The notes under the pieces are model-generated. The model was given only the letters and a program-made list of their open reading frames with translations, did not search any database and was not told the DNA's origin. The position numbers were made by a program, and so were the translations under genes. Positions 29,953 through 45,079 of a DNA stretch of 64,000 bases are shown here, piece after piece; the first letter of the stretch is position 1, and every line of letters begins with the position of its first letter. The stretch is from positions 124,001 through 188,000 of IMG/VR virus record IMGVR_UViG_3300023174_000038. One strand, written 5' to 3'.

Positions 29953-30609
29953 ATGTCAATATTAATAGGATTACCCTGCTACGGTGGAGTAGTATCAGAT
30001 AAAACAACTAACGCCCTCTTTAAATTGGGTAAACAATTCGTTAGAAATAACATAGACCACGGCATTCTCACACTAGCAAACGAAAGTTTAATAAGTCGTG
30101 GTCGTAGCCGTATCGCTAACTTCTTCATCAACAATACCGATTTTGAATATCTATTCTTCTTGGATAGCGATGTTGGATTTGAAGCTGATGATGTACTAAA
30201 ACTTCTTAATCACAATAAAGAAATGGTATGTGGTGCTTACCCAATGAAAACAGTACCACTAAAATGGAACTTTACTCTCACTCAACCACAACAACGTGAA
30301 GGTGATCTAGTTGCTATAGATAAAATAGGTATTGGGTTCAGTCTAATTCATCGTGATGTATTAATTCGTATAGCAAAACAATACCCAGAACTTAAATATA
30401 TACCAACAAACGAAAGTACTACACATAACCCAACTGAAGCTGAATACGATAATAGCTATCACTACTTCCATGAAATGCGTCAAGGTGATATCTATCTACC
30501 AGAAGATTTAAGCTTCTTCACACGGGCACGTAGTATTGGTATGCAGGCTTGGATGGATACTAGTATCAATCTATGTCACGTTGGTAGTCATGTTTTTCAG
30601 GAACAATAA
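29953..30609 (+). CDS. Glycosyltransferase (GT-A fold, GT2-like)
   Basis: YLFFLDSD DxD motif, GIGFSLIHR and EDLSF motifs. Confidence 0.75.
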   Translation: MSILIGLPCYGGVVSDKTTNALFKLGKQFVRNNIDHGILTLANESLISRGRSRIANFFINNTDFEYLFFLDSDVGFEADDVLKLLNHNKEMVCGAYPMKTVPLKWNFTLTQPQQREGDLVAIDKIGIGFSLIHRDVLIRIAKQYPELKYIPTNESTTHNPTEAEYDNSYHYFHEMRQGDIYLPEDLSFFTRARSIGMQAWMDTSINLCHVGSHVFQEQ

Positions 30610-31223
30610 TGAAAACTAATATTGTAATCATTGATGATTTCTTAGATGATCCATATACAATGCGATTAAACGCATTAAATGCTAATTATCCAACACCAGA
30701 AAGCCATACTTATCCAGGTAGAAACTCTGACAAATCTTACTTCACAGAAGAAATGTTAGAGAAGGTACAAAATCGTTGGGGTGATTACTTAATACCAGCA
30801 GAGGGTAGCAGTTGTGGTTACTTTAGAATTAGTTTAGCAACTGATACCTTTGAACAAAACATACATATTGATCCAGGTTGGGATGTGGGTGGTGTACTAT
30901 ACCTTAATACACCAAATCAATGTCGTCCAGAATCTGGCACACACTTCTACTATCATAACAGATTAGGTATAGAACGTGCTCCAGCTACACCAGAAGAAGG
31001 TAAATATTTAGGCTTCACTAACTATGAAGAAATACGTAAAAATATAATCTATGGTGATGGGCTTGATAAAACATTATGGACAAGATATGCATCTAGTCCA
31101 ATGAAATATAATCGTTTAGTATTGTTTGATCCGTTATTATGGCACAGTCATGGTGATAACTTTGGTGATTGTATGGATAACGGCAGGTTGGTTATGCTAT
31201 TCTTCTTCACAAAACAAAAATGA
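30609..31223 (+). CDS. 2OG-Fe(II) oxygenase-like protein (DUF6445-like)
   Basis: IIDDFLDDP start, HID, VLYL, GTHFY, YNRLVLF..LWHS, R: HxD...H triad. Confidence 0.7.
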   Translation: MKTNIVIIDDFLDDPYTMRLNALNANYPTPESHTYPGRNSDKSYFTEEMLEKVQNRWGDYLIPAEGSSCGYFRISLATDTFEQNIHIDPGWDVGGVLYLNTPNQCRPESGTHFYYHNRLGIERAPATPEEGKYLGFTNYEEIRKNIIYGDGLDKTLWTRYASSPMKYNRLVLFDPLLWHSHGDNFGDCMDNGRLVMLFFFTKQK

Positions 31224-31717
31224 AACAGGCATACTTTGTACCAAACTTCCCCATAAATCGTATCACACAAACCGGAGAAGATGGTTGGTGTCACATGCCA
31301 AATCATCCAAGAAATCTATATAATTATCTAGGTGCAATACTAGAACATATGGATAACAGTAAACGTATAGATCCAATACAAATAACTATACATGATGAAC
31401 AACAGGTACATGCTGGACCAAGTGGTGTATCCAGATTGTTTGCATTAACCCATCAAAGACAGTATACTCATATACCATGTATTGTTAGTAGTCCAATACA
31501 CTATGAATGGTTTGGGGAAAATGTAGTTAAAATCAATACAACTGAAGAATTACTAAGTTACTTTGATCCACAATATTTACCTAAAAGCTATGAAGTAGAT
31601 GAAAATGGTGTAGCTTGGCATAATGGTGCTTGGAGTTATGAGGAACTAGAACGTACTATGAATGTGTCCGAAGCTACTAAACTACGTATGAAACAAATGA
31701 TGACAGAGACAAATTAA
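31220..31717 (+). CDS. Hypothetical protein, possible ParB/sulfiredoxin-like fold
   Basis: DPIQI...SGVSRLFAL...IPCIV loosely matches the ParB/Srx core; ATGA-coupled to the upstream gene. Confidence 0.4.
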   Translation: MKQAYFVPNFPINRITQTGEDGWCHMPNHPRNLYNYLGAILEHMDNSKRIDPIQITIHDEQQVHAGPSGVSRLFALTHQRQYTHIPCIVSSPIHYEWFGENVVKINTTEELLSYFDPQYLPKSYEVDENGVAWHNGAWSYEELERTMNVSEATKLRMKQMMTETN

Positions 31718-31718
31718 T

Positions 31719-32564
31719 ATGAAACAAGAATTCTTTTTCTATAGTGGATTGCCAAGAGCCGGTGGAACAATGTTAGCTTCAGTAATGAATCAACATCCAG
31801 ACATGTATGTAAGCCCATTAAGTCCAACTGTAGAGTTACTATATTACACAGAGAAATACTTTGATGAAGGTAGTGAAGCATATAACGCTAATCCACAACC
31901 AGTAGCTAAACAAAGTGTTTTAGAATCACTGCCCAGAGAGTATTACAAGAATATACCTAAGAAGTATATTATGGATAATAATCGTGCATGGCCTAACAAT
32001 ACTGATAGAATTTGTAAATTTATTACTAAAACTCCAAAGATTGTATGTATTGTTAGAGATGTACCATCTATCTTAGCTAGTTTTATTGATTTAGTTAATC
32101 GTAGCAATAATCCAGGAAATAACTTTATTGATCGTTGGTTAGTAGACAATCGTATGGAATTGAACACTAAGAACAGATGTTATTATTTGATGCAACCAAC
32201 TGGTATTGTGAACCAGAGTTTATGGAGTATGTATCAGGGTTATAGTAATCCAAATGTAAAATCCTGTATGCATATGGTAGAGTATGATGATTTGATTAGT
32301 AATCCGGAAGAAACATTGAGTGATATTATTGATTTTTTAGATATTCCATCGTATAAGTTTGTTTTTAACAATATTAAGAATGTAACACCCGTAGATGATG
32401 TAACTTACAATTTAGAAGGTATGCATAGTGTACGTCCTAAGTTAGCTAGTAGAAACTTAGATCCTATGGAAATATTAGGTCCTGAATTAGTTAGAGAGTA
32501 TTCTGGATTAGAATATTGGAGAGAAGTTGTAAAACCGAGCAAAGTCAAGCTGTTTAGTATATAA
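31719..32564 (+). CDS. Sulfotransferase family protein
   Basis: SGLPRAGGTML 5'-phosphosulfate loop, IVRD..SILAS 3'-phosphate motif, VEYDDLISNP. Confidence 0.8.
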   Translation: MKQEFFFYSGLPRAGGTMLASVMNQHPDMYVSPLSPTVELLYYTEKYFDEGSEAYNANPQPVAKQSVLESLPREYYKNIPKKYIMDNNRAWPNNTDRICKFITKTPKIVCIVRDVPSILASFIDLVNRSNNPGNNFIDRWLVDNRMELNTKNRCYYLMQPTGIVNQSLWSMYQGYSNPNVKSCMHMVEYDDLISNPEETLSDIIDFLDIPSYKFVFNNIKNVTPVDDVTYNLEGMHSVRPKLASRNLDPMEILGPELVREYSGLEYWREVVKPSKVKLFSI

Positions 32565-32597
32565 TATTGATAAATATACTAAAGAGAGAGAGATATT

Positions 32598-33569
32598 ATG
32601 CCAGTAACGATAACAGCGGGAATTACATTTAGTGGGGGTGGATTGACTATGGCCTTTGCACCACCCTCAGGACCAACAGCAGGTTGGTTTGGTAGCGGGA
32701 TAACTTCGGGGGTAACGGTATCATTAGTAAATAGAATAACATATGCAATTGATACGGCGACAGCTAGTGTGCGCGGTCCGCTAAGTTTAGGGAGAAAAGG
32801 ATTAGTTGCTACCGGTAATCTTGATTATGGTTGGTTTGGTGGAGGTACTATAGCAGCTGGTAGTGGCGTTCTTGTAACTCTAGTTGATCGCATTATATAT
32901 GCGACAGATACCGCTACTGCAGGCGTTCGCGGCCCATTAAGTACAGCTAGAGGATATTTAGGCGCAACAGGTAATACAACTGATGGTTGGTTTGGGGGAG
33001 GTGCTGCCACCTCCCCCTTCGTATATTATTCAACTGTAGACCGCATCACTTATGCAACTGATACTGCAACAGCAACTACACGTGGACCGTTGAGTTCAGC
33101 AAGAGTCAATGTGATTGCAACGGGCAATACAACTAATGGATGGTGGGCAGGCGGCTACGCAGGTAGCCCAACTCCCGCAGGATTCCGGTCTACTATAGAT
33201 CGTGTAACATTTTCAACTGACACTGCAACCGCTAGTGTTCGTGGTCCATTAAATAATACAAATGGGAGAATGGCTGCAACCGGTACTCCAACTGACGGAT
33301 GGTTTGGCGGCGGCTATAGAGGCTCTATCGTAGAACGAGTAACATTTTCAACAGATACGGCGACAGCTAGTGTTCGCGGTCCGTTAAGTTCAGGAAGAAG
33401 CTATTTGGCGGCATCAACCGATAGTACAACATATGGTTGGTTTGGTGGCGGTGGATCAATTTCTACAGTAGACCGAATAACATATGCTACAGACACTGCA
33501 ACTGCAACTGCACGTGGACCGTTGAGTTCAGCAAGAAGCTACTTGGCAGCAACCTCAGGTGTCCAATAA
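32598..33569 (+). CDS. Kelch-like six-repeat beta-propeller virion protein, paralogue 1
   Basis: Six ~50-aa repeats GWFGGG...VDRITYATDTATASVRGPLS.AR. Confidence 0.65.
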   Translation: MPVTITAGITFSGGGLTMAFAPPSGPTAGWFGSGITSGVTVSLVNRITYAIDTATASVRGPLSLGRKGLVATGNLDYGWFGGGTIAAGSGVLVTLVDRIIYATDTATAGVRGPLSTARGYLGATGNTTDGWFGGGAATSPFVYYSTVDRITYATDTATATTRGPLSSARVNVIATGNTTNGWWAGGYAGSPTPAGFRSTIDRVTFSTDTATASVRGPLNNTNGRMAATGTPTDGWFGGGYRGSIVERVTFSTDTATASVRGPLSSGRSYLAASTDSTTYGWFGGGGSISTVDRITYATDTATATARGPLSSARSYLAATSGVQ

Positions 33570-33584
33570 TAGAAAGAATATCTA

Positions 33585-34598
33585 ATGCCAGTAACAATAA
33601 CAGGTGGAGTAACAATTACAGGGACCGGTGTCACAATGTTTGGTCCAGCCCCGGGCCCGGCTCCAGTATCTACAGCAGGATGGTTTGGTGGTGGATATGC
33701 TCCTGGAGCAGGTCCTGGAGCAGGAAACTATTCTACAGTAACTAGACTTACTTTTGCAACAGATACCGCAACAGCTACAGTTCGTGGACCATTAAGTTTG
33801 GCTAGATATGGATTCGCTGGATCAGGTACTTCAACTAATGGCTGGTTTAGTGGTGGACAAACATCTACATTAGAATCAACTATTGACCGTATAACTTATT
33901 CAAATGATACAGCTACTGCAAGTGTACGTGGACCATTAAGTTCAGCTAGAAGATATGCTTCTTCGGTAAGTGATAACTCAACTTATAGTTGGGTTAGCGG
34001 AGGAATAGATATATCTTTACCGAGCGTATATTCATCACAGGTAGCTCGCATAATTTATGCCACAGATACTGCTACTACAACTAACCGAGGACCATTAAGT
34101 ATAGCTAGATATGCAATTACTAGTATTGGTACTACTCAATATGGATGGAATATGGCAGGATATGAGGTGAATGGGTTTGTATCTACAGTTGACCGTATAA
34201 CTTATTCAAATGACACAGCTACAGCAAGTGTACGTGGTCCATTAACCGGTGGCAAATATAAAGCATCAACATTAACTGATAGTACTACATATGGTTGGTA
34301 TGCAGGTGGAACTAGCGGCTTCCCACTTTCAATAGTTAACCGTATCACATATGCAACAGATACAACTACCGCAAGTACACGAGGTTTTTTATCTGTGCCA
34401 AGAAGTAACTCAGCTGGCGTATATGACAATACAGCTGGGTGGGTTGGAGCTGGCCTAGCCAATGGCGGACCTCTTCCTACAGTATTATCATCAAGTATTG
34501 ATAGAATAATTTATGCTACTGATACCGCTACTGCAACCTCTAGAGGTTCAGTAGGCACAGCTAGAGCATATCCCGGCAGTTCATCTGGCGTACAATAA
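33585..34598 (+). CDS. Kelch-like six-repeat beta-propeller virion protein, paralogue 2
   Basis: Same repeat; ends SSGVQ. Confidence 0.65.
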   Translation: MPVTITGGVTITGTGVTMFGPAPGPAPVSTAGWFGGGYAPGAGPGAGNYSTVTRLTFATDTATATVRGPLSLARYGFAGSGTSTNGWFSGGQTSTLESTIDRITYSNDTATASVRGPLSSARRYASSVSDNSTYSWVSGGIDISLPSVYSSQVARIIYATDTATTTNRGPLSIARYAITSIGTTQYGWNMAGYEVNGFVSTVDRITYSNDTATASVRGPLTGGKYKASTLTDSTTYGWYAGGTSGFPLSIVNRITYATDTTTASTRGFLSVPRSNSAGVYDNTAGWVGAGLANGGPLPTVLSSSIDRIIYATDTATATSRGSVGTARAYPGSSSGVQ

Positions 34599-34601
34599 AA
34601 C

Positions 34602-36419
34602 ATGATCTCAGGCGCTACCCAATCAGGGTTTCACTTTCTACAACAACATATCAATTTCTCGTCTGATACTTCAGTAGATTTTGACCCGCATAAACTAATC
34701 AATAGCAATAAACAAATAAAGATATTATGGGCACACTATGCTCACGATCAACCAATCTTTTTAAACGTAGATTGGACTAAAATAACACATATAGTATGTG
34801 TAAGTAATTGGCAAAAAACTCAATTCATTAAGTATTTTAAGATACCACAACATAAAATATCTGTAATACGTAACGGTGGTGCAGACTATTTTACATATAA
34901 ACAAAAAACAAACAAAACTCTTATATACGCTAGTACACCATTTCGTGGACTAAAATATCTACCCTATATCTTTAAACAAGTACTAAAATGTCATCCAGAC
35001 GCCATTCTTAAAGTATTCTCGGGTATGAAACTGTACGGAGATAATGATACACAAGAGTTCAAACAAATATACAATGAACTAAAAAACACACCAAATACAA
35101 TCTACAGTGAACCAATTAGTCATCAACAACTAGCTAATGAGTTTAAAGAAGCATCAGTATTAGTTTATCCAAATATATGGGAAGAAACAAGCTGTGTAAC
35201 ATTGATTGAAGCAATGCGTTCAGGATGTTACCCAATATTAAGTGATATAGGTGCATTGCCCGAAACAAGTAATGGTTATGGGACTATTGTTCCATTAGAT
35301 GCAACATATCATGCAAGTGGATGGATACCAAGTGTACAGTTTTTAGATGATTTTGTAGATAATATTTGCCAAGTACTATCACAAACTAAATATACTCATA
35401 CTAAAGAGCAGGCTGAGTGGGCTTGTGAATACTATAACTGGAACACTATTGCTATTGAATGGCATACATTACTAAACAAACTATCAACAAAAGGATCAAC
35501 AATGAAAAAGAAAATGGAAATCTCTAGTCTAACATCACATACAGGTGATAAAATTGTACATGATGAAAAAGTACTATCACAAGTATTTGATGAAATCTTC
35601 CGCTGGGAAGAAGCAGATAAAGAACATGCTCAAGGACGTAGCAACTTCCAAATTGAAAAGTTTATCACATTAGATAACTATACAATTCCAAGTGCTTTCA
35701 ATGCTATGTTGAAGAATCGTAGAATTATGGCAGAAGGATTATTCAGCAAGATTACTGAGATGAAAGAACATCAACGTGAGTTTGATTATAAGTGGAATAA
35801 GAAAAACAAAGAAGAACCAATTCAATGGCCAACTAAAGATGGTGGCACTAAGTTGTGCTGGTATGATTTAGATTACTTAAATCTACAAAATTTCTTAAAG
35901 AGTAGTGAGTTAGAGATCCGTGATCGGGTACAACAGATTGCTACGTTTGATAAGATACTAGATAGATTAGTAGAACAGAATGGTGGTCCAATCACACGTG
36001 AACAGTTTGAGAATGAAGATCATGTATATTGGGAACGTAGATTAGCTAACCAAGCTATGGATGAGATGATTAGTCGTAACACTGGTATTGGTGTTGGTAA
36101 CATTCACAGTATGCGTAGAGCCAGTGCTCCTACATTAATTTCTGGTGATGTAAATCGTGTTAAGAATGATTTCCCTGATTTAGGTAAAGCATTGACTGGT
36201 GGCGAACATAGTGTAGAGTTCTTATTAGAGTTGCAAAAGAAAGTTGTTGCTGGTATTGAAGAAGTAACTAGTAGTGATATACTAGCATTAGCTAATGAAA
36301 AGGTTACAGAGCGTATTGGCATTACTGAACGGTTAGACAGAATGCATGAGAAACCGGCACAAGGTAAATCAGAAGTATCACCAAAGAGTTTGTTTAATGA
36401 CAAATGGAATAGTAAATGA
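34602..36419 (+). CDS. GT-B (GT4-like) glycosyltransferase fused to a helical domain
   Basis: VCVSNWQ, YASTPFRGL and EETSCVTLIEAM (EX7E) in aa 1-300; aa 301-605 is an unrelated helical region with its own RBS and ATG. Confidence 0.75.
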   Translation: MISGATQSGFHFLQQHINFSSDTSVDFDPHKLINSNKQIKILWAHYAHDQPIFLNVDWTKITHIVCVSNWQKTQFIKYFKIPQHKISVIRNGGADYFTYKQKTNKTLIYASTPFRGLKYLPYIFKQVLKCHPDAILKVFSGMKLYGDNDTQEFKQIYNELKNTPNTIYSEPISHQQLANEFKEASVLVYPNIWEETSCVTLIEAMRSGCYPILSDIGALPETSNGYGTIVPLDATYHASGWIPSVQFLDDFVDNICQVLSQTKYTHTKEQAEWACEYYNWNTIAIEWHTLLNKLSTKGSTMKKKMEISSLTSHTGDKIVHDEKVLSQVFDEIFRWEEADKEHAQGRSNFQIEKFITLDNYTIPSAFNAMLKNRRIMAEGLFSKITEMKEHQREFDYKWNKKNKEEPIQWPTKDGGTKLCWYDLDYLNLQNFLKSSELEIRDRVQQIATFDKILDRLVEQNGGPITREQFENEDHVYWERRLANQAMDEMISRNTGIGVGNIHSMRRASAPTLISGDVNRVKNDFPDLGKALTGGEHSVEFLLELQKKVVAGIEEVTSSDILALANEKVTERIGITERLDRMHEKPAQGKSEVSPKSLFNDKWNSK

Positions 36420-37123
36420 AAAACAATTTATTAACTAACATATTAATTGCACCCAATGTAATATCAAAAGAGGGTGTAGCTTTTATTATGGAGCATGCCA
36501 AGAGTCAACGAAAAGAAGATTTATCTGTATTTGATCCAGAACAAAGTAACAAAAGTGGCAACACCAAATTTAGTGTAGACAAGAAGGTTAGAGATACACA
36601 GATGATTGACCTAGAAGATATTGCTAGTGAGATTATTGATTTGTTTCGTAATGTTGTAACCAATGTTATTAATCCATTTTATGAGTTTGAGGTTAAAGAT
36701 TCTGAGTTGCCACAACTATTACATTATGGTGTAGATGGGCATTATATGCCGCATTGTGATGGTGAGTCACTATGGAAGCCACCTGGTAATGAGCCATTGA
36801 TTTGGCGTAAGAGTACTGATAGAGATTTAAGTACAGTATTGTTTTTGAATGATGATTTTGAAGGTGGGGATTTTGTATTCCCTGAATTAAAAGTAAGAGT
36901 TCGCCCAGAGCCGGGTATGTTAGTTTGTTTCCCTTCTACACATGAGTATTTGCATGGAGTTGAGCCAGTTACTAAAGGAACTAGATATAGTATTGTAAAT
37001 TGGATGACAGTTAAGGGTTTTCCAAGTATGGCAGACGAAACTAATATGATTAATCATAAATACAATATAGGTATTGATAAGCCTATATCTAATAAAAAGG
37101 AAAAAACATGGCTAAGTACATAA
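36416..37123 (+). CDS. Prolyl 4-hydroxylase-like 2OG-Fe(II) oxygenase
   Basis: HYMPHCD, LFLNDDFEGG, FPS...HGVEPVTKGTRYS. Confidence 0.85.
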   Translation: MKNNLLTNILIAPNVISKEGVAFIMEHAKSQRKEDLSVFDPEQSNKSGNTKFSVDKKVRDTQMIDLEDIASEIIDLFRNVVTNVINPFYEFEVKDSELPQLLHYGVDGHYMPHCDGESLWKPPGNEPLIWRKSTDRDLSTVLFLNDDFEGGDFVFPELKVRVRPEPGMLVCFPSTHEYLHGVEPVTKGTRYSIVNWMTVKGFPSMADETNMINHKYNIGIDKPISNKKEKTWLST

Positions 37124-37521
37124 AGCATTATTACGTAGATGGTGAGAATTTAGTAGAGTTCTTTGTTGATAAGAACATGGGACCAAACGGTAAGACACAT
37201 CCAAGAATTGACGGATTAGATGTTAAGTTTTGGTTTGTAGACACTAATGGTATTGATTACTGTATGAGTGTAGTACCAGATGAGACTGTTATTACTCCAG
37301 AAAATGGCTTGGGTGAGGGTACATATGAGCAGTGGTCCAATGAAATTGCTGGTCAATTTGAGTCACAGAGAGCAAGTGTAGCTAGCAATAGTGATATGTT
37401 GACACGATTGAGTAAGACTGAAGCTGAAGTATTAGCTATGGCTTTTGACAATAGTAGTGTTGAGTCAATGTTAGCTAGTTTTGCACAATTAGCACCCACT
37501 CCAGAAGTATTAGGCAGTTGA
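37108..37521 (+). CDS. Hypothetical protein
   Basis: AAGGA RBS; 137-aa ORF overlapping the upstream stop. Confidence 0.6.
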   Translation: MAKYIKHYYVDGENLVEFFVDKNMGPNGKTHPRIDGLDVKFWFVDTNGIDYCMSVVPDETVITPENGLGEGTYEQWSNEIAGQFESQRASVASNSDMLTRLSKTEAEVLAMAFDNSSVESMLASFAQLAPTPEVLGS

Positions 37522-37542
37522 TCCTTAAGCCATATTAGAAGT

Positions 37543-37550
37543 TATAAATA
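37543..37550 (+). promoter_or_regulatory. T4-type late promoter
   Basis: Intergenic TATAAATA upstream of Kelch-like paralogues 3-6. Confidence 0.65.
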
Positions 37551-37583
37551 GTGTGATAAATACACTATGATAAAGGTAAATAT

Positions 37584-38537
37584 ATGGCGATTGAGATAGG
37601 ACCAGGTTGGACGATAGGTGGTGGAATAACAGTTTCCAGTCCACCTTCTGCTCCTACAGTAGCAACAGCAGGCTGGTTTGTAGGTGGTACAGGTGGTGGC
37701 GCCGGCATTACCACTGTAAATAGAGTAACATTTGCAAATGACACAGCAACAGCAAGTGTTCGAGGTCCACTAAGTGTAGCCTTAAATGGGGGAGCAGGCA
37801 CCGGTAATACGACTTATGGTTGGTTTGGTGGCAGTTCCCTTAGTTCAGTGTATCAATCAACGGTCCAACGAATCACATATGCAACTGATTCAGCAACTGC
37901 AAGTGTGCGTGGTCCATTAAGTACAGCTAGAGGATATTTAGCCGCAACCGGTAACACAACTGATGGTTGGTTTGCTGATGGATTTGGTAGCATATCAATA
38001 GTAGACCGTATTACATATGCATCTGATACAGCAACTGCAAGTGTGCGCGGCCCCTTAAACTTGGGGGTATATGCCTTAGCCGCTACCGGCGATAGCACTA
38101 ATGGTTGGTTTGGCGGCGGAAGTGGAACTAGTGCAATACAACGTATCACCTATGCAACAGATACAGCCACTGGAACTATACGAGGGGCATTAAGCGGTAC
38201 AATAAGAGGTTTGGCGGCATCAACTGATAGCACTACATATGGCTGGTTTGGCGGAGGATACCAAACTATTGCACCTGTTTGGGCATCATTAGTTCAACGT
38301 ATTACTTATGCAACTGATACAGCCGCAGTAAGTGTTCGTGGTCCATTAAGTGCAGGAAGATTTTATTTAGCGGCATGCGGTAATACAACTGATGGTTGGT
38401 TTGGTTCAGGATACACACCTGCAGCAGTGTCATTAATAGATAGAATTACCTATGCAACAGATACAGCAACAGCCAGTGTGCGTGGTCCGTTAAGTTTAAG
38501 CACCTACTATCTCTCAGCGGCAGCAGGGACACAATAA
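37584..38537 (+). CDS. Kelch-like beta-propeller virion protein, paralogue 3
   Basis: Six GWFGG/ATDTATASVRGPL repeats. Confidence 0.65.
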   Translation: MAIEIGPGWTIGGGITVSSPPSAPTVATAGWFVGGTGGGAGITTVNRVTFANDTATASVRGPLSVALNGGAGTGNTTYGWFGGSSLSSVYQSTVQRITYATDSATASVRGPLSTARGYLAATGNTTDGWFADGFGSISIVDRITYASDTATASVRGPLNLGVYALAATGDSTNGWFGGGSGTSAIQRITYATDTATGTIRGALSGTIRGLAASTDSTTYGWFGGGYQTIAPVWASLVQRITYATDTAAVSVRGPLSAGRFYLAACGNTTDGWFGSGYTPAAVSLIDRITYATDTATASVRGPLSLSTYYLSAAAGTQ

Positions 38538-38558
38538 TAGAAAGAATAATATATGTCA
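38531..38558 (+). repeat. 28-nt exact gene-junction repeat (second copy 40451..40478; partial copy 33564..33580)
   Basis: ACAATAATAGAAAGAATAATATATGTCA spans the stop and start of Kelch-like genes. Confidence 0.85.
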
Positions 38559-39494
38559 GTAACATTTAGTGGTGGAATAACATTTACAGGTGGAGGGTTT
38601 AGTTTCACTGCCGCACCTCCGGTTGGTGCTACAGCTGGTTGGTTTGGTGGTGGTATACCAACGTATAGCACAGTACAACGTATGACATTTGCAACAGATA
38701 CTAGTGCTACTAGTATACGAGGCCCACTTAGTTCCGGCAGATACGGTCTATCGGGTGCCGGTACTCTCACAAATGGTTGGTTTGGCGGCGGCGCCACACC
38801 CGCATTATTATCAACAGTAGACCGAGTAACATATGCAACTGACACAGCAACTGCTAGTGTACGTGGTCCATTAACTGTTGCAAGAATGCAACTAGGAGCA
38901 TCAACTGATAGTACTACTTACGGTTGGTTTGGTGCGGGATATCTTGGATATCCGACTACTCTATCTACAGTAGACCGAATAACATATGCCACTGATACAG
39001 CAACAGCAATTAGTCGAGGGCCGGTACATCAGGCACTTGGGGTAGCGGCTACGGGTACAACTGCATATGGTTGGTTTGGTGGAGGTTATAAATACCCTAC
39101 TGGAAGCATGTCAACCATAAGCCGTATTGATTATTCAAGTGATGCATCAACTGCTAGTGTGCGCGGCCCATTAAGTGTGGCAAGGTTCCTGACCGGGGCT
39201 ACAGGTAATGATACTAATGGCTGGTTTGCTGGTGGGCAAGGTACCGTTGTAGATAGAATTACATATGCAACAGATACTGCAACAGCTAGTGTGCGTGGAC
39301 CATTAAATAGTCCGACACGTGAAGGTATAGCTGGTGTTGGTAATACTACAAACGGTTGGTTTGCCGGTGGCTTTAATACTAGTACTATAAACCGTATTAC
39401 ATATGCAACTGATACTGCGACGGCAAGCCTAACCGGTACTTTAAGTGAATACTTTCAAATTACAAAAGTCGGCGGCACCTCCGGTCAACAATAA
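38553..39494 (+). CDS. Kelch-like beta-propeller virion protein, paralogue 4
   Basis: Six GWFGG/ATDTATASVRGPL repeats. Confidence 0.65.
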   Translation: MSVTFSGGITFTGGGFSFTAAPPVGATAGWFGGGIPTYSTVQRMTFATDTSATSIRGPLSSGRYGLSGAGTLTNGWFGGGATPALLSTVDRVTYATDTATASVRGPLTVARMQLGASTDSTTYGWFGAGYLGYPTTLSTVDRITYATDTATAISRGPVHQALGVAATGTTAYGWFGGGYKYPTGSMSTISRIDYSSDASTASVRGPLSVARFLTGATGNDTNGWFAGGQGTVVDRITYATDTATASVRGPLNSPTREGIAGVGNTTNGWFAGGFNTSTINRITYATDTATASLTGTLSEYFQITKVGGTSGQQ

Positions 39495-39512
39495 CATAAA
39501 GGTTTAAAAAGA

Positions 39513-40457
39513 ATGAGTATAACAATAACTGGCGGATTTACAATGGCAGGCGGTGGATTTACACTGGTAGCTGCACCTCCATCTGATCCTACTGCTAGTT
39601 GGGTTGCCGGCGGAGTAGCTAGTGGAGTTGATATATCTACTGTGCAACGTATCACCTATGCAACAGATACAGCTACTGCAACTATACGTGGTTCATTAAA
39701 TTTAGCAAGAGATAGATTTGCGGCAACAGGTAATACAACTGATGGTTGGTTTGGCGGCGGAGCTTACCCTGCAAATTCTACAATACAACGAATAACATAC
39801 GCAACAGATACCGCAACAGCATCAGTGCGTGGCCCCTTAAGTTCAGCTAGATATAATTTGGGAGCAAGCGGTAATACAACTAATGGTTGGTTTGGCGGCG
39901 GTACTGATTACCCCGGAGTTTCTACAGTAGACCGTGTCACTTACTCAACAGATACAATAACCGCAAGTATACGTGGTCCATTAAGTTTGGCCCGCATTAC
40001 CCCGGCTGCAGCCGGTAATACAACTGATGGTTGGTTTGGTGGAGGAGCAACTGGAGCAACAGTGGTGTCAACAGTAGATCGCATTACATACGCTACAGAT
40101 ACAGCAACAGCAAGTGTACGTGGTCCACTAAGTTTAGCCCGCAAACAGGCTGCAGCCGCAGGTAATACAACGTACGGATGGTATGCTGGTGGCTATGCCG
40201 GCGGCTCGGTTGGTGGACTAGTGGATCGTATAACATATGCAACAGATACCGCAACCGCATCGGTACGTGGGCCGGTATATGATTCTTATCAAATAGCAGC
40301 ATCTGGAAATTCAACGTACGGATGGTTTGCTGGCGGTAGTGGTGACCTATCAACAGTACAACGTATCACTTATTCAAATGATACTGTTGCGGCAACTCCG
40401 CGTGGTCCATTAAGTGTAGGCGCCACAGGACAAGCGGCTGCATCAGGCGTACAATAA
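39513..40457 (+). CDS. Kelch-like beta-propeller virion protein, paralogue 5
   Basis: Six GWFGG/ATDTATASVRGPL repeats. Confidence 0.65.
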   Translation: MSITITGGFTMAGGGFTLVAAPPSDPTASWVAGGVASGVDISTVQRITYATDTATATIRGSLNLARDRFAATGNTTDGWFGGGAYPANSTIQRITYATDTATASVRGPLSSARYNLGASGNTTNGWFGGGTDYPGVSTVDRVTYSTDTITASIRGPLSLARITPAAAGNTTDGWFGGGATGATVVSTVDRITYATDTATASVRGPLSLARKQAAAAGNTTYGWYAGGYAGGSVGGLVDRITYATDTATASVRGPVYDSYQIAASGNSTYGWFAGGSGDLSTVQRITYSNDTVAATPRGPLSVGATGQAAASGVQ

Positions 40458-40472
40458 TAGAAAGAATAATAT

Positions 40473-41414
40473 ATGTCAATAACAATAACAACGGGTGGAA
40501 TAACAATGACTGGTGGAGGTGTAAGCTTTAGTGCCGCACCACCCTCCACACCAACAGCCAGTTGGGTAGCCGGCGGAGGAAATATATTATCAACGGTAGA
40601 TCGTATTACATATGCTACTGATACTGCTACTGCAAGTGTGCGTGGCCCTCTTAGTTGGGCAACTAACAAACAGGCAGCTACTGGTAATTTGACTTATGGT
40701 TGGTGGGCCGGCGGATTTGATGGTGTTGCTCCTACTGATTTTGCAAGTACAGTACAACGAATTACATATGCCACAGATACTGCTGCCTCAAGTATTCGCG
40801 GTCCAATAAATTCAGAAAAAACTATGTTGGCTGCTGCAGGAACCACAGATTATGGATGGTTTGCCGGTGGAGCTTTGTATGTACAAACAGAACAATCAAC
40901 AGTAGATCGTATAACATATGCAACTGATACAGCAACTGCATCATTACGTGGTACAATAAGTTTAGCTAGATACTATTTGGGCGGAACATCAGATGGTAGT
41001 ACGTATGGATGGTTTGGTGGTGGTTATGCACCTTATAGAAGTAGGGTGGATCGTATAACATATGCAACAGATACAGCAACTGCTAGTGTACGTGGTCCAT
41101 TAAATATATCTATAATAATACCGGCAGCAACAGGTAATACAACTAATGGTTGGTGGGGAGGCGGATATGCTTCCGGTGCTTCAACAGCAGTATATCGTGT
41201 AACTTATGCAACCGATACAAATACAGCAAGTGTTCGTGGACCATTAAGTCAATCTGTGGGTACTGCATCAGGAAACTTGTCTTATGGTTGGTTTATGGGT
41301 GCTATTAACGTAGATAGAATTGATTATTCAAATGATACTGCTACTGCAAGTTTGCGTGGACAACTAGCAACAAATAGATCTACTTATGGTGCATCAGCTT
41401 CGGGTGTACAATAA
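40473..41414 (+). CDS. Kelch-like beta-propeller virion protein, paralogue 6
   Basis: Six GWFGG/ATDTATASVRGPL repeats. Confidence 0.65.
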   Translation: MSITITTGGITMTGGGVSFSAAPPSTPTASWVAGGGNILSTVDRITYATDTATASVRGPLSWATNKQAATGNLTYGWWAGGFDGVAPTDFASTVQRITYATDTAASSIRGPINSEKTMLAAAGTTDYGWFAGGALYVQTEQSTVDRITYATDTATASLRGTISLARYYLGGTSDGSTYGWFGGGYAPYRSRVDRITYATDTATASVRGPLNISIIIPAATGNTTNGWWGGGYASGASTAVYRVTYATDTNTASVRGPLSQSVGTASGNLSYGWFMGAINVDRIDYSNDTATASLRGQLATNRSTYGASASGVQ

Positions 41415-41438
41415 AATATACGGGTAAGCTATCTCTAC

Positions 41439-41446
41439 TATAAATA
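41439..41446 (+). promoter_or_regulatory. T4-type late promoter
   Basis: Intergenic TATAAATA upstream of the kinase/nucleotidyltransferase gene. Confidence 0.65.
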
Positions 41447-41468
41447 TTTTTATATCAGGAGATAAAAC

Positions 41469-42260
41469 ATGACACAACGTATTCTTATTATGGGCTTGCC
41501 CGGCGCAGGCAAAACTTATTTGGCACAACACTTACTTGGGCATCTACAAACGGCTAATAAACGAGTAGCTTGGCTTAACGCAGACGATGTCCGTAAAAAA
41601 TATAACGACTGGGACTTCAGTAAAGAAGGTCGCATTCGTCAAAGTCTACGTATGCGTGAACTAGCAGATAACATGACTGACACTGACTACGTTATATGCG
41701 ATTTTGTTGCACCATTGGTTGAAATGCGTAATAACTTTAAAGCTGATTGGACTATCTGGGTTGATACTATCAGTGAAGGTAGATACGAAGATACTAATAA
41801 AGCATTCGTCCCACCAGAAGTATATGACTTCCGTATCACAGAACAAAATAGTGAAAAATGGAGTGAGTTCATCTTTGCACATATATACGATAATAGACGT
41901 AGACCAACATTCAATTGGCAAAAAGAAACGGTACAGATGCTAGGAAGGTGGCAACCATGGCATGATGGTCATCGTGCATTGTTTGAACGTGCTATTGCTA
42001 AAACAGGACAAGTAATTATTCAAATACGTGACTGTCAAGGCTGGCAAGGTAGTAACCCATTTGAAATAGAAAAGGTCAAATCATTCATTAAACGTGATTT
42101 GGACATGTTATATCAAGGTCAATATGAAATTCAAGTTGTACCAAATATCACTAACATTACTTATGGGCGTGATGTTGGTTATAAAATTGAACAAGAAACA
42201 TTTGACGAAAAAATTCATGCTATAAGTGCCACAAGTATACGTAAAATGTTAGGATTATAA
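41469..42260 (+). CDS. Adenylylsulfate kinase (CysC)-like domain fused to an HxGH nucleotidyltransferase domain
   Basis: GLPGAGKT P-loop, LNADDVR, DFSKEGR; C-terminal GRWQPWHDGH and ISATSIR motifs. Confidence 0.75.
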   Translation: MTQRILIMGLPGAGKTYLAQHLLGHLQTANKRVAWLNADDVRKKYNDWDFSKEGRIRQSLRMRELADNMTDTDYVICDFVAPLVEMRNNFKADWTIWVDTISEGRYEDTNKAFVPPEVYDFRITEQNSEKWSEFIFAHIYDNRRRPTFNWQKETVQMLGRWQPWHDGHRALFERAIAKTGQVIIQIRDCQGWQGSNPFEIEKVKSFIKRDLDMLYQGQYEIQVVPNITNITYGRDVGYKIEQETFDEKIHAISATSIRKMLGL

Positions 42261-42294: not shown

Positions 42295-42732
42295 ATGAAT
42301 ACATTTCAATCGTCTTACGACAATAGATTACAATCTTGGTATAATTTACGCAATCAAATCAAATCACTTGATTTAGCTCAACAATGTGTGGAAATTGACA
42401 AGTGGTGGCAACAAGCCCCACTTGTCAACCACTATCTACACCCAATTGATTTACCCACATGGCCCGGGCCTTGGGAGCTTTTGGTAGAAAACACCTACTG
42501 TACGCTTGCAAGAGGACTAGGAATGTGCTATACTCTACTATTAATGAATATTACTGATATAGAGTTTGTGTTAGCTACTGATAGTCAAGGAAATGACACA
42601 TCATTAGTCTTGGTAGACAACGCAAAATATCTGCTTAATTACTGGCCAAACACCGTGATAAGTAATAATCTACAAGATTTTAAAATAGTAAGCAAATTAG
42701 ATATAACAACAATTAATAATAAGATAGGGTAA
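42295..42732 (+). CDS. Hypothetical protein, weak transglutaminase-like (BTLCP) resemblance
   Basis: WPGPWELL...YC...YTL pattern; no clear catalytic His. Confidence 0.4.
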   Translation: MNTFQSSYDNRLQSWYNLRNQIKSLDLAQQCVEIDKWWQQAPLVNHYLHPIDLPTWPGPWELLVENTYCTLARGLGMCYTLLLMNITDIEFVLATDSQGNDTSLVLVDNAKYLLNYWPNTVISNNLQDFKIVSKLDITTINNKIG

Positions 42733-44207: not shown

Positions 44208-44215
44208 TAGGTAAT

Positions 44216-44251
44216 AGTATTTCAAGTATAAATAAGAGTATAGGAAATACT
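44216..44251 (+). promoter_or_regulatory. Late promoter within an RBS-sequestering hairpin upstream of the GIY-YIG gene
   Basis: AGTATTTC (44216-44223) is complementary to GAAATACT (44244-44251), which overlaps the AGGA RBS; TATAAATA (44227-44234) lies between the arms. Confidence 0.7.
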
Positions 44252-44254
44252 TTT

Positions 44255-45079
44255 ATGAAGAAATACATTATCTATTGTCATACACTAAATGGTAAGAAAT
44301 ACATAGGTTATACAAGTAAAACGATGGAAGAACGATTGCAGGATCATATTGGAGAAGCATTAGAAGGAAGTGATAGACATTTCCATCGTGCTATCAAAAA
44401 GTATGGGTCTGAAAATATTGTCTCAGAAATCTTAGCAGAAGTATACAATAAAGACGAAGCCAAAAAGTTAGAAGAAACTTTCGTTGAAAAGTTAGATACT
44501 TTCAAAAATGGCTATAATATGACTCGCGGCGGTGATGGTGGCAACACTCTTGAAAAATATACAGACGAAAAGATGAAAGAGCATCGTAAATTGAAATCTT
44601 ATAACGCTGTTGGAATGAACAATGGCAACGCAAAGCCTAATATTACCAAAGAAATGATAGTAGATGCTGTAGTTCAATTTTGTATTGAGAACAATAAACA
44701 AGGCGATTATTTGTTAAGAAAAGAGATTGAATCGATCCTCAAAGAGCAATTGGGCGTTAGTCAAATGATATTAAAGAATAGAATTGATAATGGGCTAAAA
44801 CAGTTAATTGATGAAGTAAACAAGAAGTTATCTACCCCTGTAAAATATGATCCATACTATAGAGGTGAGGATCATAAGAAGCGGTTAGCATCGGCAACAT
44901 CAAAGTTGCGCTGGGCGACAAATGGTATTGATAATGTAAAACTACCGGCAGATGAATTGGATAAATTTCTCAAAGAAAACCCAACATATAAACAAGGTAG
45001 AAAATTGAAGAATAGTGAAGATAGAAAAGAAATTAAATCAAAGTTGGGTTATAGTAGAATAGGATTAGGGAATGTATGA
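44255..45079 (+). CDS. GIY-YIG homing endonuclease (free-standing, inside split nrdA)
   Basis: YIIY...KKYIGYT...R...H...E...GYNMTRGG GIY-YIG motifs. Confidence 0.85.
   Translation: MKKYIIYCHTLNGKKYIGYTSKTMEERLQDHIGEALEGSDRHFHRAIKKYGSENIVSEILAEVYNKDEAKKLEETFVEKLDTFKNGYNMTRGGDGGNTLEKYTDEKMKEHRKLKSYNAVGMNNGNAKPNITKEMIVDAVVQFCIENNKQGDYLLRKEIESILKEQLGVSQMILKNRIDNGLKQLIDEVNKKLSTPVKYDPYYRGEDHKKRLASATSKLRWATNGIDNVKLPADELDKFLKENPTYKQGRKLKNSEDRKEIKSKLGYSRIGLGNV

What the first reader, a model, noticed from the sequence alone, without database searches (positions are those of the whole stretch)
29953..42260. Self-contained hydroxylation-glycosylation-sulfation pathway embedded among fibre genes
Seen: GT-A and GT-B glycosyltransferases, two 2OG-Fe(II) oxygenases (one P4H-like), a sulfotransferase and an APS-kinase-like gene are interleaved with structural genes under late-type promoters. 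Candidate substrates are adjacent: S/T/N-rich fibres and Pro-rich linkers (APP, GPAPGPAP). Known: sulfotransferases need PAPS, which APS kinase makes, and hydroxyproline can be a glycosylation acceptor. Inference: the phage decorates its virion with possibly sulfated glycans.
Basis: inference. Interest (0 to 1): 0.62.

Follow-up and report, generated by a model that had tools for sequence, protein, structure and literature searches.

The report
Phage protein-decoration module with Kelch propellers
A 349-kb T4-like freshwater phage carries a conserved gene block in which a sulfotransferase, two glycosyltransferases and a prolyl-hydroxylase-like enzyme alternate with six near-identical Kelch-propeller proteins. 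It ends in an unusual two-domain enzyme that may be a miniature maker of the sulfate donor PAPS; this would be a kind of phage protein modification not yet described, but no chemistry has been shown.

Summary
The genes are real and lie exactly at 29953-42260, all on the + strand. Firm calls: a PAPS-type sulfotransferase, a GT4-like GT-B, and a P4H-type 2OG oxygenase. Moderate call: a GT-A. The second "2OG oxygenase" (DUF6445) is only a lead.

The interleaved "structural genes" are not fibres. They are six paralogous six-bladed Kelch propellers, and the genome holds at least ten. True S/T/N-rich giant fibres lie upstream.

The enzymes and Kelch paralogs recur together in IMG/VR relatives down to about 40% identity, in shuffled order. 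The giant fibres and the kinase are not constant neighbours. The Kelch proteins are therefore the best candidate substrates or partners.

The "APS-kinase-like" gene is a fusion of an APS-kinase-fold domain and a truncated NadM-like HxGH nucleotidyltransferase.
- The same transferase domain is fused to canonical CysC in small marine bacterial genomes. No Sat or CysD was found in them, and they hold sulfotransferases nearby.
- In phages the fusion often sits beside sulfotransferases.
- Against: the family is far more widespread than sulfotransferases, and five other phage genomes carrying it show no recognisable sulfotransferase.

Verdict: the module is real and conserved. Virion decoration is plausible but unshown. 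"Self-contained" is only partly right. The mini PAPS synthase is an attractive, untested hypothesis.

The parts
29953..30609 (+). GT-A-like glycosyltransferase (218 aa) with a DSD motif
   Evidence: phrog_1574 at 1e-25 and a weak glycosyltransferase PHROG hit. PDB STIV A197 at 8.6e-6. Conserved in all module loci. A paralog with 32% identity lies elsewhere in the genome.
30609..31223 (+). DUF6445 protein (204 aa), possibly a cupin or 2OG-oxygenase-like enzyme
   Evidence: PF20043 at 1.8e-12. Atlas lead to 2OG-FeII_Oxy_3 clusters, 0.91. No profile match to the P4H. Present once or twice in every module locus.
31220..31717 (+). Conserved 165-aa protein of unknown function
   Evidence: No Pfam, PHROG or NCBIfam hit. 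Retained in the close relatives L005-L010.
31719..32564 (+). PAPS-dependent sulfotransferase (281 aa)
   Evidence: Sulfotransfer_3 at 1.3e-12 and Sulfotransfer_1 at 8e-9. The 5'-PSB and 3'-PB motifs are invariant. The family profile best matches TPST1 (3.7e-13), TPST2 (5e-10) and CurM ST (5e-9). It is the only sulfotransferase found in the genome.
32570..32576 (+). ATAAATA late-promoter-like motif, 28 nt before the first Kelch gene
   Evidence: genome-wide enrichment upstream of ORFs.
32598..34598 (+). Kelch-propeller paralogs 1 and 2 (32598-33569, 33585-34598)
   Evidence: phrog_19111. About 50-57% identical to the other paralogs. The blade block RITYATDTATASVRGPL is near-invariant.
34602..36419 (+). 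GT-B (GT4-like) glycosyltransferase in the N-terminal half; about 300 aa of uncharacterised C-terminal region (605 aa in all)
   Evidence: Glycos_transf_1 at 3.2e-9 and Glyco_trans_1_4. phrog_2170 at 1e-29.
36416..37123 (+). P4H-type 2OG-Fe(II) oxygenase (235 aa)
   Evidence: 2OG-FeII_Oxy_3 at 2.4e-16. PDB prolyl 3-hydroxylase 1 at 1e-9 and Bacillus anthracis P4H at 2e-7. One of three such genes in the genome.
37108..37521 (+). Conserved 137-aa protein of unknown function, always following the P4H gene
   Evidence: No family hit. Syntenic with the P4H gene in L005-L013 and L057.
37543..37550 (+). TATAAATA late-promoter motif, 41 nt before Kelch paralog 3
37584..41414 (+). Kelch-propeller paralogs 3-6 (37584-38537, 38553-39494, 39513-40457, 40473-41414)
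   Evidence: AlphaFold2 model of paralog 5: pLDDT 86.5, pTM 0.87. Foldseek to Keap1/KLHL12 Kelch domains: E about 1e-17, TM 0.78-0.91. Copy number varies between close relatives.
41439..41446 (+). TATAAATA late-promoter motif, 30 nt before the kinase gene
41469..42260 (+). Two-domain enzyme (263 aa). Residues 1 to about 145 are an APS-kinase-fold P-loop kinase. Residues about 150-263 are a truncated NadM-like HxGH/ISxTxxR nucleotidyltransferase. Proposed mini PAPS synthase.
   Evidence: APS_kinase at 1e-11, N-terminal part only. Model pLDDT 94.3. APS kinases fill the top of the Foldseek list (1.4e-7) and give VIA Z 16-18.6, against 14.8 or less for other kinases. Transferase profile to NadM NMNAT at 3e-8, N-terminal half only. 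Domain fusions and gene contexts.

Best explanation
The region is a late-expressed 'decoration' module of a T4-like jumbo phage. Its enzymes are a P4H-type hydroxylase, a GT-A and a GT-B glycosyltransferase, a TPST-like sulfotransferase, DUF6445 and two conserved unknowns. I propose that they post-translationally modify the phage's own family of six-bladed Kelch-propeller proteins encoded among them.

Every blade of these propellers carries the same hydroxyl- and proline-containing block, RITYATDTATASVRGPL. Each protein also starts with a short APPS- or GPAP-type motif. These are the likeliest acceptor sites. The propellers are most likely exposed virion proteins (receptor-binding or decoration proteins).

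The last gene supplies the sulfate donor. Its small HxGH nucleotidyltransferase domain would adenylylate sulfate to give APS. Its APS-kinase-fold domain would then phosphorylate the 3'-OH to give PAPS. It would thus act as a miniature PAPS synthase. Sugar donors, 2-oxoglutarate and iron come from the host.

Shown: gene identities, folds, conserved synteny, domain fusions and promoter motifs.
Inferred: the substrates, the virion location, and both catalytic activities of the fusion enzyme.
For: 1. Conserved module.
- All enzyme genes and Kelch paralogs recur together in IMG/VR loci L005-L010 (sulfotransferase 90-95% identical).
- They also recur, in a different order and with double-length Kelch proteins, in L011-L013 (41-43%) and in L057.
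- Synechococcus phage S-SKS1 has sulfotransferase, an unannotated Kelch homologue and a 2OG oxygenase together.
- S-SRM01 has RCC1 propellers, a 2OG oxygenase, a sulfotransferase, a glycosyltransferase and an epimerase beside its long tail fibre.
- The fibres and the kinase are not constant neighbours.

2. Closest solved relatives modify proteins or are viral: TPST1/2, prolyl 3/4-hydroxylases, STIV A197.

3. Propellers.
- Confident Kelch fold.
- 163 blades from 28 proteins share the block, with R, D, T, R and G at 94-100% and P at 82%.

4. Timing and setting.
- T4-type late motifs lie before Kelch genes 1 and 3 and before the kinase gene.
- gp55 and gp23 homologues are present.
- The neighbourhood is structural.

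5. PAPS supply.
- The kinase domain is structurally closest to APS kinases, with a clear gap to other kinases.
- The residues aligned to the APS-kinase substrate-binding motifs (D39, R42, F50, R55, P82) are at least 90% conserved across 51 homologues.
- The same transferase domain (41% identity, all motifs kept) is fused to a full canonical CysC in a family of at least 120 protein clusters.
- In two bacterial genomes of about 1.1-1.2 Mb, that fusion lies 7-16 kb from two or three Sulfotransfer_3 genes. No Sat and no strong CysD/CysH were found in these genomes or in the other 24 small relatives searched.
- In 80 phage loci holding the fusion, 17 have a sulfotransferase-family gene within 6 genes. 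Eight of these are directly adjacent, in several different contexts.
- One homologue has the kinase domain fused to a sulfotransferase-like domain.
- The phage has no Sat, no second APS kinase and no PAPS reductase. The sulfotransferase is therefore its only recognisable PAPS user.
Against: - No experimental data exist for any step, and no RNA run holds the region.
- Virion location of the Kelch proteins is inferred from position and promoter motifs only.
- The conserved blade block could be purely structural.
- The sulfotransferase-Kelch complex prediction gave no verdict.
- The kinase fusion is hugely more common than the sulfotransferase: at least 594 IMG/VR hits against 9, and 8000 or more 90% clusters.
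- Phage Sano, DLP_6 and three jumbo genomes carry the fusion but show no match over any family's cut-off to three sulfotransferase Pfam families. The PF09037 search did not ring in any control genome either, so it says little.
- About 22 of 80 loci place the fusion among FolE/QueD/QueE and cytidylyltransferase genes.
- In the relatives L006/L009 the module lacks the kinase nearby.
- Cyanophages with the sulfotransferase lack this kinase.
- By sequence the transferase domain is NMNAT-like, not Sat-like.
- The kinase domain lacks the APS-kinase lid and falls below NCBIfam cut-offs.
- For PBCV-1, a virus with its own P4H, a review lists an unpublished amino-acid analysis of purified particles that detected no hydroxyproline (reference 162 of PMC7019647).
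Confidence: 0.42

Rival explanations
1. The enzymes remodel host envelope glycans (LPS, capsule, S-layer) or a small molecule during infection, for example to mask receptors or exclude superinfection. The Kelch propellers are co-located receptor-binding or lectin-like proteins, not substrates.
For: - GT4-type and GT-A enzymes and Sulfotransfer_3 members commonly act on glycans; there is a weak NoeE hit.
- Related phages carry carbamoyltransferase, SGNH, UDP-Galp-mutase-like and methyltransferase genes in the same variable island.
- Propellers are typical binding modules.
Against: - The one-to-one interleaving of enzymes and Kelch genes is conserved at about 40% identity.
- The closest solved relatives of the sulfotransferase and the oxygenase are protein-modifying enzymes.
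- Late-type promoter motifs are not early ones.
Confidence: 0.2
2. The module modifies the giant S/T/N-rich fibre proteins upstream rather than the Kelch proteins.
For: - ORFs 1-4284, 10833-25805 and 26047-29913 have 22-37% Ser+Thr and almost no charge.
- The first enzyme gene starts 40 nt after the 1288-aa fibre gene and has no promoter motif of its own.
Against: - The 1288-aa protein has no homologue in any related module locus.
- In L006 and L009, where the enzymes are 94% identical, ordinary proteins flank the module instead of fibres.
Confidence: 0.1
3. The kinase-transferase fusion has nothing to do with sulfate. It is a nucleotide or cofactor enzyme, and it merely borders a hypervariable island. 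Candidate activities: NR kinase plus NMNAT for NAD salvage; PPAT plus a 3'-kinase for CoA; or a kinase and adenylyltransferase acting in DNA hypermodification.
For: - The transferase domain matches NadM-type NMNATs.
- The family is present in many phages without recognisable sulfotransferases.
- It often lies among FolE/QueD/QueE genes, or among early DNA-metabolism genes in Sano and DLP_6.
- In this window it sits next to ribonucleotide reductase.
- Other fusions join the kinase domain to an NTP_transferase or to SGNH-like domains.
Against: - APS kinases are clearly the nearest fold: Z 16-18.6, against 10.6 for NRK1 and 11 for dephospho-CoA kinase.
- The residues aligned to the APS-kinase substrate-binding motifs are conserved.
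- The transferase lacks about 24 residues between the two stretches that align to archaeal NMNAT.
- The same transferase domain is fused to canonical CysC.
- That fusion occurs in genomes that hold sulfotransferases and in which neither Sat nor CysD was found.
- Adjacency to sulfotransferases recurs in several contexts.
Confidence: 0.33
4. There is no pathway. The genes are independent passengers of a recombination-prone variable island, and their adjacency reflects island dynamics only.
For: - Copy number of the Kelch genes varies.
- The position of the kinase varies.
- Neighbours of the kinase differ widely among 80 loci.
Against: The same seven non-Kelch genes stay together with Kelch genes across 95% to 40% identity, despite rearrangement. 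This is not expected for unrelated passengers.
Confidence: 0.1

Closest known systems
Virus-encoded virion glycosylation: chlorovirus PBCV-1 capsid glycans and viral prolyl 4-hydroxylase (reviewed in PMC7019647; Eriksson et al. 1999, cited there); mycobacteriophage capsid and tail glycosylation (Freeman et al. 2023, PMC10527164, cited in PMC12801897)
   Same: The virus carries its own glycosyltransferases, and in PBCV-1 also a P4H. They lie next to or among structural genes and act in the host cytoplasm.
   Different: - This module adds a sulfotransferase and a putative PAPS-making enzyme.
- The conserved partners are an expanding family of Kelch propellers, not the capsid protein.
- Nothing has been shown biochemically here.
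- A review of PBCV-1 lists an unpublished analysis that detected no hydroxyproline in purified particles.
Bifunctional PAPS synthases (human PAPSS1/2; Aquifex Sat-CysC, PDB 2gks) and dedicated PAPS supply for a sulfotransferase (rhizobial NodPQ with NodH; own knowledge)
   Same: An adenylyltransferase and an APS-kinase-fold domain sit on one chain. In many phage loci the gene is placed beside a sulfotransferase.
   Different: - The transferase domain has about 110 aa and is NadM/NMNAT-like. It gives no match to the ATP-sulfurylase family.
- The kinase domain lacks the lid region.
- The whole protein has 263 aa, against about 550-620 aa.
- Activity is untested.
Protein-tyrosine sulfotransferases (TPST1/2; bacterial RaxST acting on RaxX, own knowledge)
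   Same: They are the closest solved sequences to the phage sulfotransferase family (3.7e-13). The PAPS-binding motifs are shared.
   Different: - The stretch aligned to the segment of TPST that, by my reading, holds its catalytic Glu carries no conserved acid in the phage family; an invariant His lies elsewhere.
- CurM-type sulfotransferases score almost as well.
- The acceptor (tyrosine, sugar or other hydroxyl) is unknown.
Cytoplasmic hydroxyproline glycosylation of Skp1 in Dictyostelium and Toxoplasma (PhyA P4H followed by Gnt1 and further glycosyltransferases; own knowledge)
   Same: A soluble P4H and soluble glycosyltransferases act in sequence on a proline of a folded protein.
   Different: This is a eukaryotic single-site pathway without sulfation. 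No homology beyond the enzyme superfamilies was tested.
Kelch / RCC1 beta-propeller proteins of phage variable islands (phrog_19111; 'regulator of chromosome condensation' proteins of S-SRM01)
   Same: Six-bladed propellers occur in tandem paralog arrays next to tail-fibre genes and next to sulfotransferase and 2OG genes.
   Different: Function is unknown in all cases. The family here gives no Pfam Kelch or RCC1 hit and has a near-invariant blade motif.

Membership tests
APS kinase (CysC, PF01583 / TIGR00455) | P-loop fold closest to solved APS kinases | tested here: met
   Foldseek: APS kinases fill the top of the list (1.4e-7 and weaker). VIA-align Z 16-18.6, rmsd 1.8-2.4 A over 130-144 residues; the next family is gluconate kinase at 14.8.
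APS kinase (CysC, PF01583 / TIGR00455) | Substrate-side motifs (DGDxxR Asp/Arg, GFS Phe, following Arg, FISP) | tested here: inconclusive
   D39, R42, F50, R55 and P82 are at least 90% conserved in 51 homologues and align to these motifs. The first Asp of DGD is replaced (NADD). The functional reading of the motifs is from my own knowledge of APS-kinase structures.
APS kinase (CysC, PF01583 / TIGR00455) | Full-length domain including the lid region; score above curated equivalog cut-offs | tested here: not met
   The Pfam match covers profile positions 5-94 of 152 only. TIGR00455 scores 36 bits against a cut-off of 138.7.
ATP sulfurylase (Sat, PF01747) | Sequence membership of the transferase domain, or any Sat gene in the phage | tested here: not met
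   No PF01747 match anywhere in the 348.7-kb genome. If the transferase domain makes APS, it is not a member of this family.
NadM-type NMN adenylyltransferase | GRFQPxHxGH and ISxTxxR nucleotide-binding motifs | tested here: met
   Both motifs are conserved: R160, Q162, P163, H165, G167, H168, and I252, S253 at 90% or more; R258 invariant. Profile to 2qjt at 3e-8 and to MJ0541 at 7.6e-6.
NadM-type NMN adenylyltransferase | Complete domain including the acceptor-binding segment; curated score | tested here: not met
   Only the N-terminal half aligns. About 25 residues stand where MJ0541 has 49. NCBIfam scores are 22-26 bits, against cut-offs of 127-418.
PAPS-dependent sulfotransferase (Sulfotransfer_3, PF13469) | Score above the gathering threshold, and conserved 5'-PSB and 3'-PB motifs | tested here: met
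   48.8 bits against 27. G10, R13, G15, T17 and R113, S121 are invariant in 18 homologues of 20-95% identity.
Protein-tyrosine sulfotransferase (TPST) | Catalytic acid of TPST and protein-tyrosine specificity | tested here: inconclusive
   TPST is the best solved relative. The aligned stretch has no conserved Glu in the phage family. Specificity cannot be tested in silico.
Prolyl 4-hydroxylase-type 2OG-Fe(II) oxygenase (PF13640) | Domain score; HxD...H iron triad and a basic 2OG-binding residue | tested here: met
   60.9 bits against 27. An HCD, a later His and an Arg-x-Ser are visible in the translation. Prolyl hydroxylases are the best PDB matches. Proline specificity itself was not tested.
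2OG-Fe(II) oxygenase (for the DUF6445 protein) | Detectable homology to a 2OG oxygenase family | tested here: inconclusive
   Pfam gives only DUF6445. No PDB sequence match. hhalign to the P4H family gives probability 0.3%. Atlas feature score is 0.91 with 154 shared features, a lead only.
Kelch beta-propeller | Six four-stranded blades; structural match to solved Kelch domains | tested here: met
   pLDDT 86.5, pTM 0.87. Keap1/KLHL12/KLHL17 at E 1e-17 and TM 0.78-0.91 over 290-300 residues. No Pfam Kelch hit by sequence.
GT-A glycosyltransferase | DxD motif and homology to a known GT-A | tested here: inconclusive
   A DSD motif is present in the translation. STIV A197 at 8.6e-6 over 114 residues. 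No Pfam or NCBIfam hit.
GT-B glycosyltransferase, GT4-like (PF00534) | Score above the gathering threshold | tested here: met
   37 bits against 26.4, plus Glyco_trans_1_4 at 31.8 against 27. Only residues of about 55-295 are covered; the C-terminal 300 aa are unassigned.

The most novel reading that the evidence does not exclude
The roughly 110-residue HxGH domain is a new, minimal class of sulfate adenylyltransferase. Joined to an APS-kinase(-like) domain, it would form the smallest known PAPS synthase.

This enzyme would be widespread in phages (thousands of 90% clusters). As a fusion with canonical CysC, it would also occur in streamlined marine bacteria in which no Sat or CysDN was found.

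In this phage it would feed a TPST-like sulfotransferase. Together with a prolyl hydroxylase and two glycosyltransferases, that enzyme would build sulfated, glycosylated Kelch-propeller proteins on the virion. This would be a kind of phage surface chemistry not described so far.
Probability: 0.3. Interest if true: 0.85.

Novelty: new variant of a known kind. Interest (0 to 1): 0.66.

Why it matters
**Phage sulfotransferases.** Their role is explicitly called unclear in the literature (PMC10580990). I found no paper in the library searched that describes sulfation of phage proteins or a phage PAPS supply. A conserved enzyme-plus-propeller module gives a concrete, testable system for this question.

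**Host recognition.** If the Kelch proteins are modified virion proteins, phage host recognition or environmental stability in lakes may depend on surface chemistry that gene-based host-range prediction ignores.

**Sulfur metabolism.** Separately, a miniature PAPS synthase would add a third route to APS, next to Sat and CysDN. It could explain how some streamlined marine bacteria make PAPS for their sulfotransferases although neither enzyme was found in their genomes.

Tried and rejected
- Megablast of the whole region against isolate phages: no match.
- Sigma-70 promoter and terminator scans: not above shuffles.
- Pfam, PHROG and NCBIfam for ORFs 31220-31717, 37108-37521 and 42295-42732, the 1288-aa fibre and the GT-B C-terminal half: nothing.
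- DUF6445 against PDB sequences and against the P4H profile: nothing.
- Complex prediction, sulfotransferase with Kelch paralog 5: no verdict (score 0.00). This is evidence neither for nor against binding.
- hhalign of neighbour clusters against the sulfotransferase family: only c84 reached 82% probability. c25, c70 and c16 did not. Pfam on them was blank or below cut-off. The looser count of 31/80 loci with 'sulfotransferase-like' neighbours is therefore soft; the strict count is 17/80.
- Context of the first transferase-CysC protein, P0221: contigs too short.
- Rfam search for an intron in the split nrdA: none. tRNA scan: none.
- Sequencing runs: DNA only, from freshwater and lake metagenomes; no RNA holder.
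- The idea that the conserved blade Tyr is a sulfation site was dropped. It corresponds to the usual structural Tyr/Phe of Kelch blades (75% Y, 25% F).
- No alternative genetic code was needed.

Full report
**Setting**

The window is bases 124001-188000 of a 348,701-bp IMG/VR virus record rated 100% complete. The phage is T4-like. It has a gp23-type capsid gene (32% identity, 9e-48) and a gp55-type late sigma factor (1e-10). The region occurs in lake and freshwater DNA metagenomes from about ten studies, and no RNA run holds it. All genes of the finding are on the + strand and are tightly packed.

**What the genes are**

- 29953-30609: a 218-aa GT-A-like protein. It has a DSD motif, matches the virus STIV A197 glycosyltransferase at 8.6e-6 and has PHROG support. 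It has no Pfam hit.
- 30609-31223: DUF6445. That it is a 2OG oxygenase is only a lead.
- 31220-31717 and 37108-37521: conserved unknowns.
- 31719-32564: a PAPS-type sulfotransferase.
  - Both PAPS-binding motifs are invariant in 18 homologues.
  - The family profile is closest to the protein-tyrosine sulfotransferases TPST1 (3.7e-13) and TPST2 (5e-10), then to CurM ST (5e-9).
- 34602-36419: a GT4-like GT-B with an unassigned C-terminal half.
- 36416-37123: a P4H-type 2OG oxygenase. Its best solved relatives are prolyl 3- and 4-hydroxylases.
- Six ORFs of about 315 aa (32598, 33585, 37584, 38553, 39513, 40473): paralogs 50-60% identical to one another.

**The paralogs are Kelch propellers, not fibres**

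- An AlphaFold2 model (pLDDT 86.5) is a six-bladed propeller. It matches Keap1/KLHL Kelch domains at E about 1e-17 and TM 0.8-0.9.
- Across 163 blades from 28 proteins, the block RITYATDTATASVRGPL is almost invariant.
- The genome holds at least four more paralogs outside the cluster.
- The real fibres lie upstream. ORFs of more than 1427, 4990 and 1288 aa have 55-70% S/T/N/G/A and about 1% charged residues.

**Promoters**

- TATAAATA is rarer than my rough composition-based estimate (14 per strand against about 34).
- Even so, 17 of 28 copies lie within 70 nt upstream of a same-strand ORF. For the + strand only about 2.6% of positions qualify by chance.
- Copies lie before Kelch gene 3 (37543) and before the kinase gene (41439).
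- An ATAAATA lies before Kelch gene 1 (32570).
- The first four enzyme genes have none. They may be read through from the fibre gene.

**Is it a module?**

Yes.
- Six IMG/VR loci with 90-95% identical sulfotransferases keep the order GT-A, DUF6445, unknown, sulfotransferase, Kelch, GT-B, P4H, unknown, Kelch. The Kelch copy number varies.
- Three loci at 41-43% identity, and L057, keep the same enzyme set with Kelch genes in another order.
- In L006 and L009 the module is flanked by ordinary genes. Neither the giant fibres nor the kinase is nearby. The 1288-aa fibre has no homologue in any related locus.
- Cyanophage S-SKS1 has a sulfotransferase, an unannotated Kelch homologue and a 2OG oxygenase together.
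- S-SRM01 has RCC1 propellers, a 2OG oxygenase, a sulfotransferase, a glycosyltransferase and an epimerase beside its long tail fibre.

The conserved association is therefore between enzymes and propellers. This makes the propellers the best candidate substrates or partners.

**The kinase gene (41469-42260)**

It is a fusion of two domains.
- *Kinase domain (residues 1 to about 145).*
  - The full model has pLDDT 94.3.
  - APS kinases fill the top of the Foldseek list.
  - They give VIA Z 16-18.6, against 14.8 for gluconate kinase, 13.4 for PSTK/Kti12, about 11 for dephospho-CoA kinase and 10.6 for NRK1.
  - The residues aligned to the APS-kinase substrate-binding motifs are conserved in 51 diverse homologues.
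  - The lid is missing and curated cut-offs are not reached.
- *Transferase domain (residues about 150-263).*
  - It carries the GRFQPxHxGH and ISATxIR motifs of HxGH nucleotidyltransferases.
  - It aligns to NadM-type NMNATs only in its N-terminal half. About 24 residues are missing between the two stretches that align to archaeal NMNAT.

**Evidence linking the fusion to sulfate**

1. The same transferase domain (41% identity, all motifs kept) is fused to a complete, canonical CysC (PF01583, 5.7e-63). This family has at least 120 protein clusters, many of them from marine samples.
2. In two bacterial genomes of about 1.1-1.2 Mb, that fusion lies 7-16 kb from two or three large Sulfotransfer_3 genes.
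   - Neither ATP sulfurylase nor a strong CysD/CysH match was found in them, nor in the other 24 small relatives searched.
   - Genome completeness is unknown, so this is 'not found', not 'absent'.
3. Among 80 phage loci holding the fusion, 17 have a sulfotransferase-family gene within six genes. Eight are directly adjacent, in several different gene contexts.
   - One homologue fuses the kinase domain to a domain with sulfotransferase-like features. Relatives of that domain also sit beside the kinase gene.

The phage itself has no Sat, no second APS kinase and no PAPS reductase. My reading is a two-step mini PAPS synthase: sulfate is adenylylated by the small transferase domain, and the product is then 3'-phosphorylated.

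**Evidence against that reading**

- The fusion family is enormous: at least 594 IMG/VR hits, and 8000 or more clusters, many about 80-85% identical. Sulfotransferase relatives gave 9 loci.
- Xylella phage Sano, Stenotrophomonas phage DLP_6 and three complete jumbo genomes carry it without a match over any family's cut-off to three sulfotransferase Pfam families. The PF09037 search did not ring in any control genome, so that search says little.
- About 22 of 80 loci place it among FolE, QueD, QueE and a cytidylyltransferase. In Sano and DLP_6 it lies among early DNA-metabolism genes.
- In this genome the FolE-QueE cluster is elsewhere, at about 267-271 kb.
- A nucleotide, cofactor or DNA-modification role therefore remains a serious rival. 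I put it at about one in three.

**What 'self-contained' means here**

- No sugar-1-phosphate nucleotidyltransferase was found in the genome. Two epimerase-family genes lie far from the cluster. Sugar donors would therefore be the host's.
- Only the sulfate donor may be phage-made.

**Comparison with the known**

- Virus-encoded virion glycosylation is known for chloroviruses and mycobacteriophages, and PBCV-1 encodes a P4H (PMC7019647; Freeman et al. 2023, cited in PMC12801897).
- For PBCV-1, an unpublished analysis listed in that review detected no hydroxyproline in purified particles. This is a warning against assuming the target.
- The role of phage sulfotransferases is stated to be unclear (PMC10580990).
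- I found no description of phage protein sulfation or of this fusion enzyme.

**Verdict**

- The substrate assignment shifts from fibres to Kelch propellers.
- Virion decoration is plausible but unshown.
- The putative mini PAPS synthase is the most interesting lead, and it can be tested directly.

Noticed in passing
window 42735-46856 (and 46856-47563): The ribonucleotide reductase large-subunit gene is split into a 490-aa N-part and a 338-aa C-part. A GIY-YIG endonuclease gene (44255-45079) and about 760 nt of non-coding DNA lie between them. A second homing endonuclease gene follows, before nrdB. Relatives (L010, L014, L016) have one intact 772-aa nrdA. No Rfam intron was found.
   Followed up: partly
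window 1-4284, 10833-25805, 26047-29913: Giant ORFs of more than 1427, 4990 and 1288 aa have 55-70% S/T/N/G/A and about 1% charged residues. They give no Pfam or PHROG hits. They are presumably beta-helical fibres or adhesin-like virion proteins.
   Followed up: partly
G000:C1 119081-119974, 281809-283001, 320171-321121, 330650-331591: Four further full Kelch paralogs and one fragment lie outside the cluster, so the family has at least ten members in this genome. A second GT-A paralog lies at 293008-293637, and two more P4H-type genes lie at about 196.5 kb and 274.2 kb.
   Followed up: no
L108 (G004:C4), L111-L113; G023:C3: In small marine bacterial genomes the transferase-CysC fusion sits between an MFS transporter and a 655-aa unknown protein. 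A 1660-aa RTX-like (HemolysinCabind) protein follows. TPR-2OG-FeII_Oxy_5 proteins flank the group, and TPR-sulfotransferases lie 7-16 kb away. This is a cellular parallel: a giant secreted protein together with hydroxylase, sulfotransferase and PAPS genes.
   Followed up: partly
loci L014-L093 around the kinase gene: In related phages the kinase fusion borders a hypervariable island. The island holds tandem arrays of RCC1 propellers (up to five copies), fn3/Lcl_C proteins, a NodU-like carbamoyltransferase, SGNH/GDSL proteins, a TctC-like protein, methyltransferase-like genes and others.
   Followed up: partly
G000:C1 about 267500-271000 (- strand): A FolE / cytidylyltransferase-like / QueD-like / QueE-like cluster suggests 7-deazaguanine or pterin chemistry. 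In many relatives the kinase fusion is inserted into this cluster, but not here.
   Followed up: no
NC_020851.1 (S-SKS1) 202302-203126, - strand: An unannotated ORF in Synechococcus phage S-SKS1 is homologous to the Kelch paralogs (31% identity over 264 residues). It lies in the annotation gap two genes downstream of its sulfotransferase.
   Followed up: partly
whole genome G000: TATAAATA is under-represented overall against my composition-based estimate (14 per strand, about 34 expected). It is concentrated just upstream of ORF starts, and 9 of the 14 + strand copies lie in this window. This is consistent with T4-type late promoters.
   Followed up: yes
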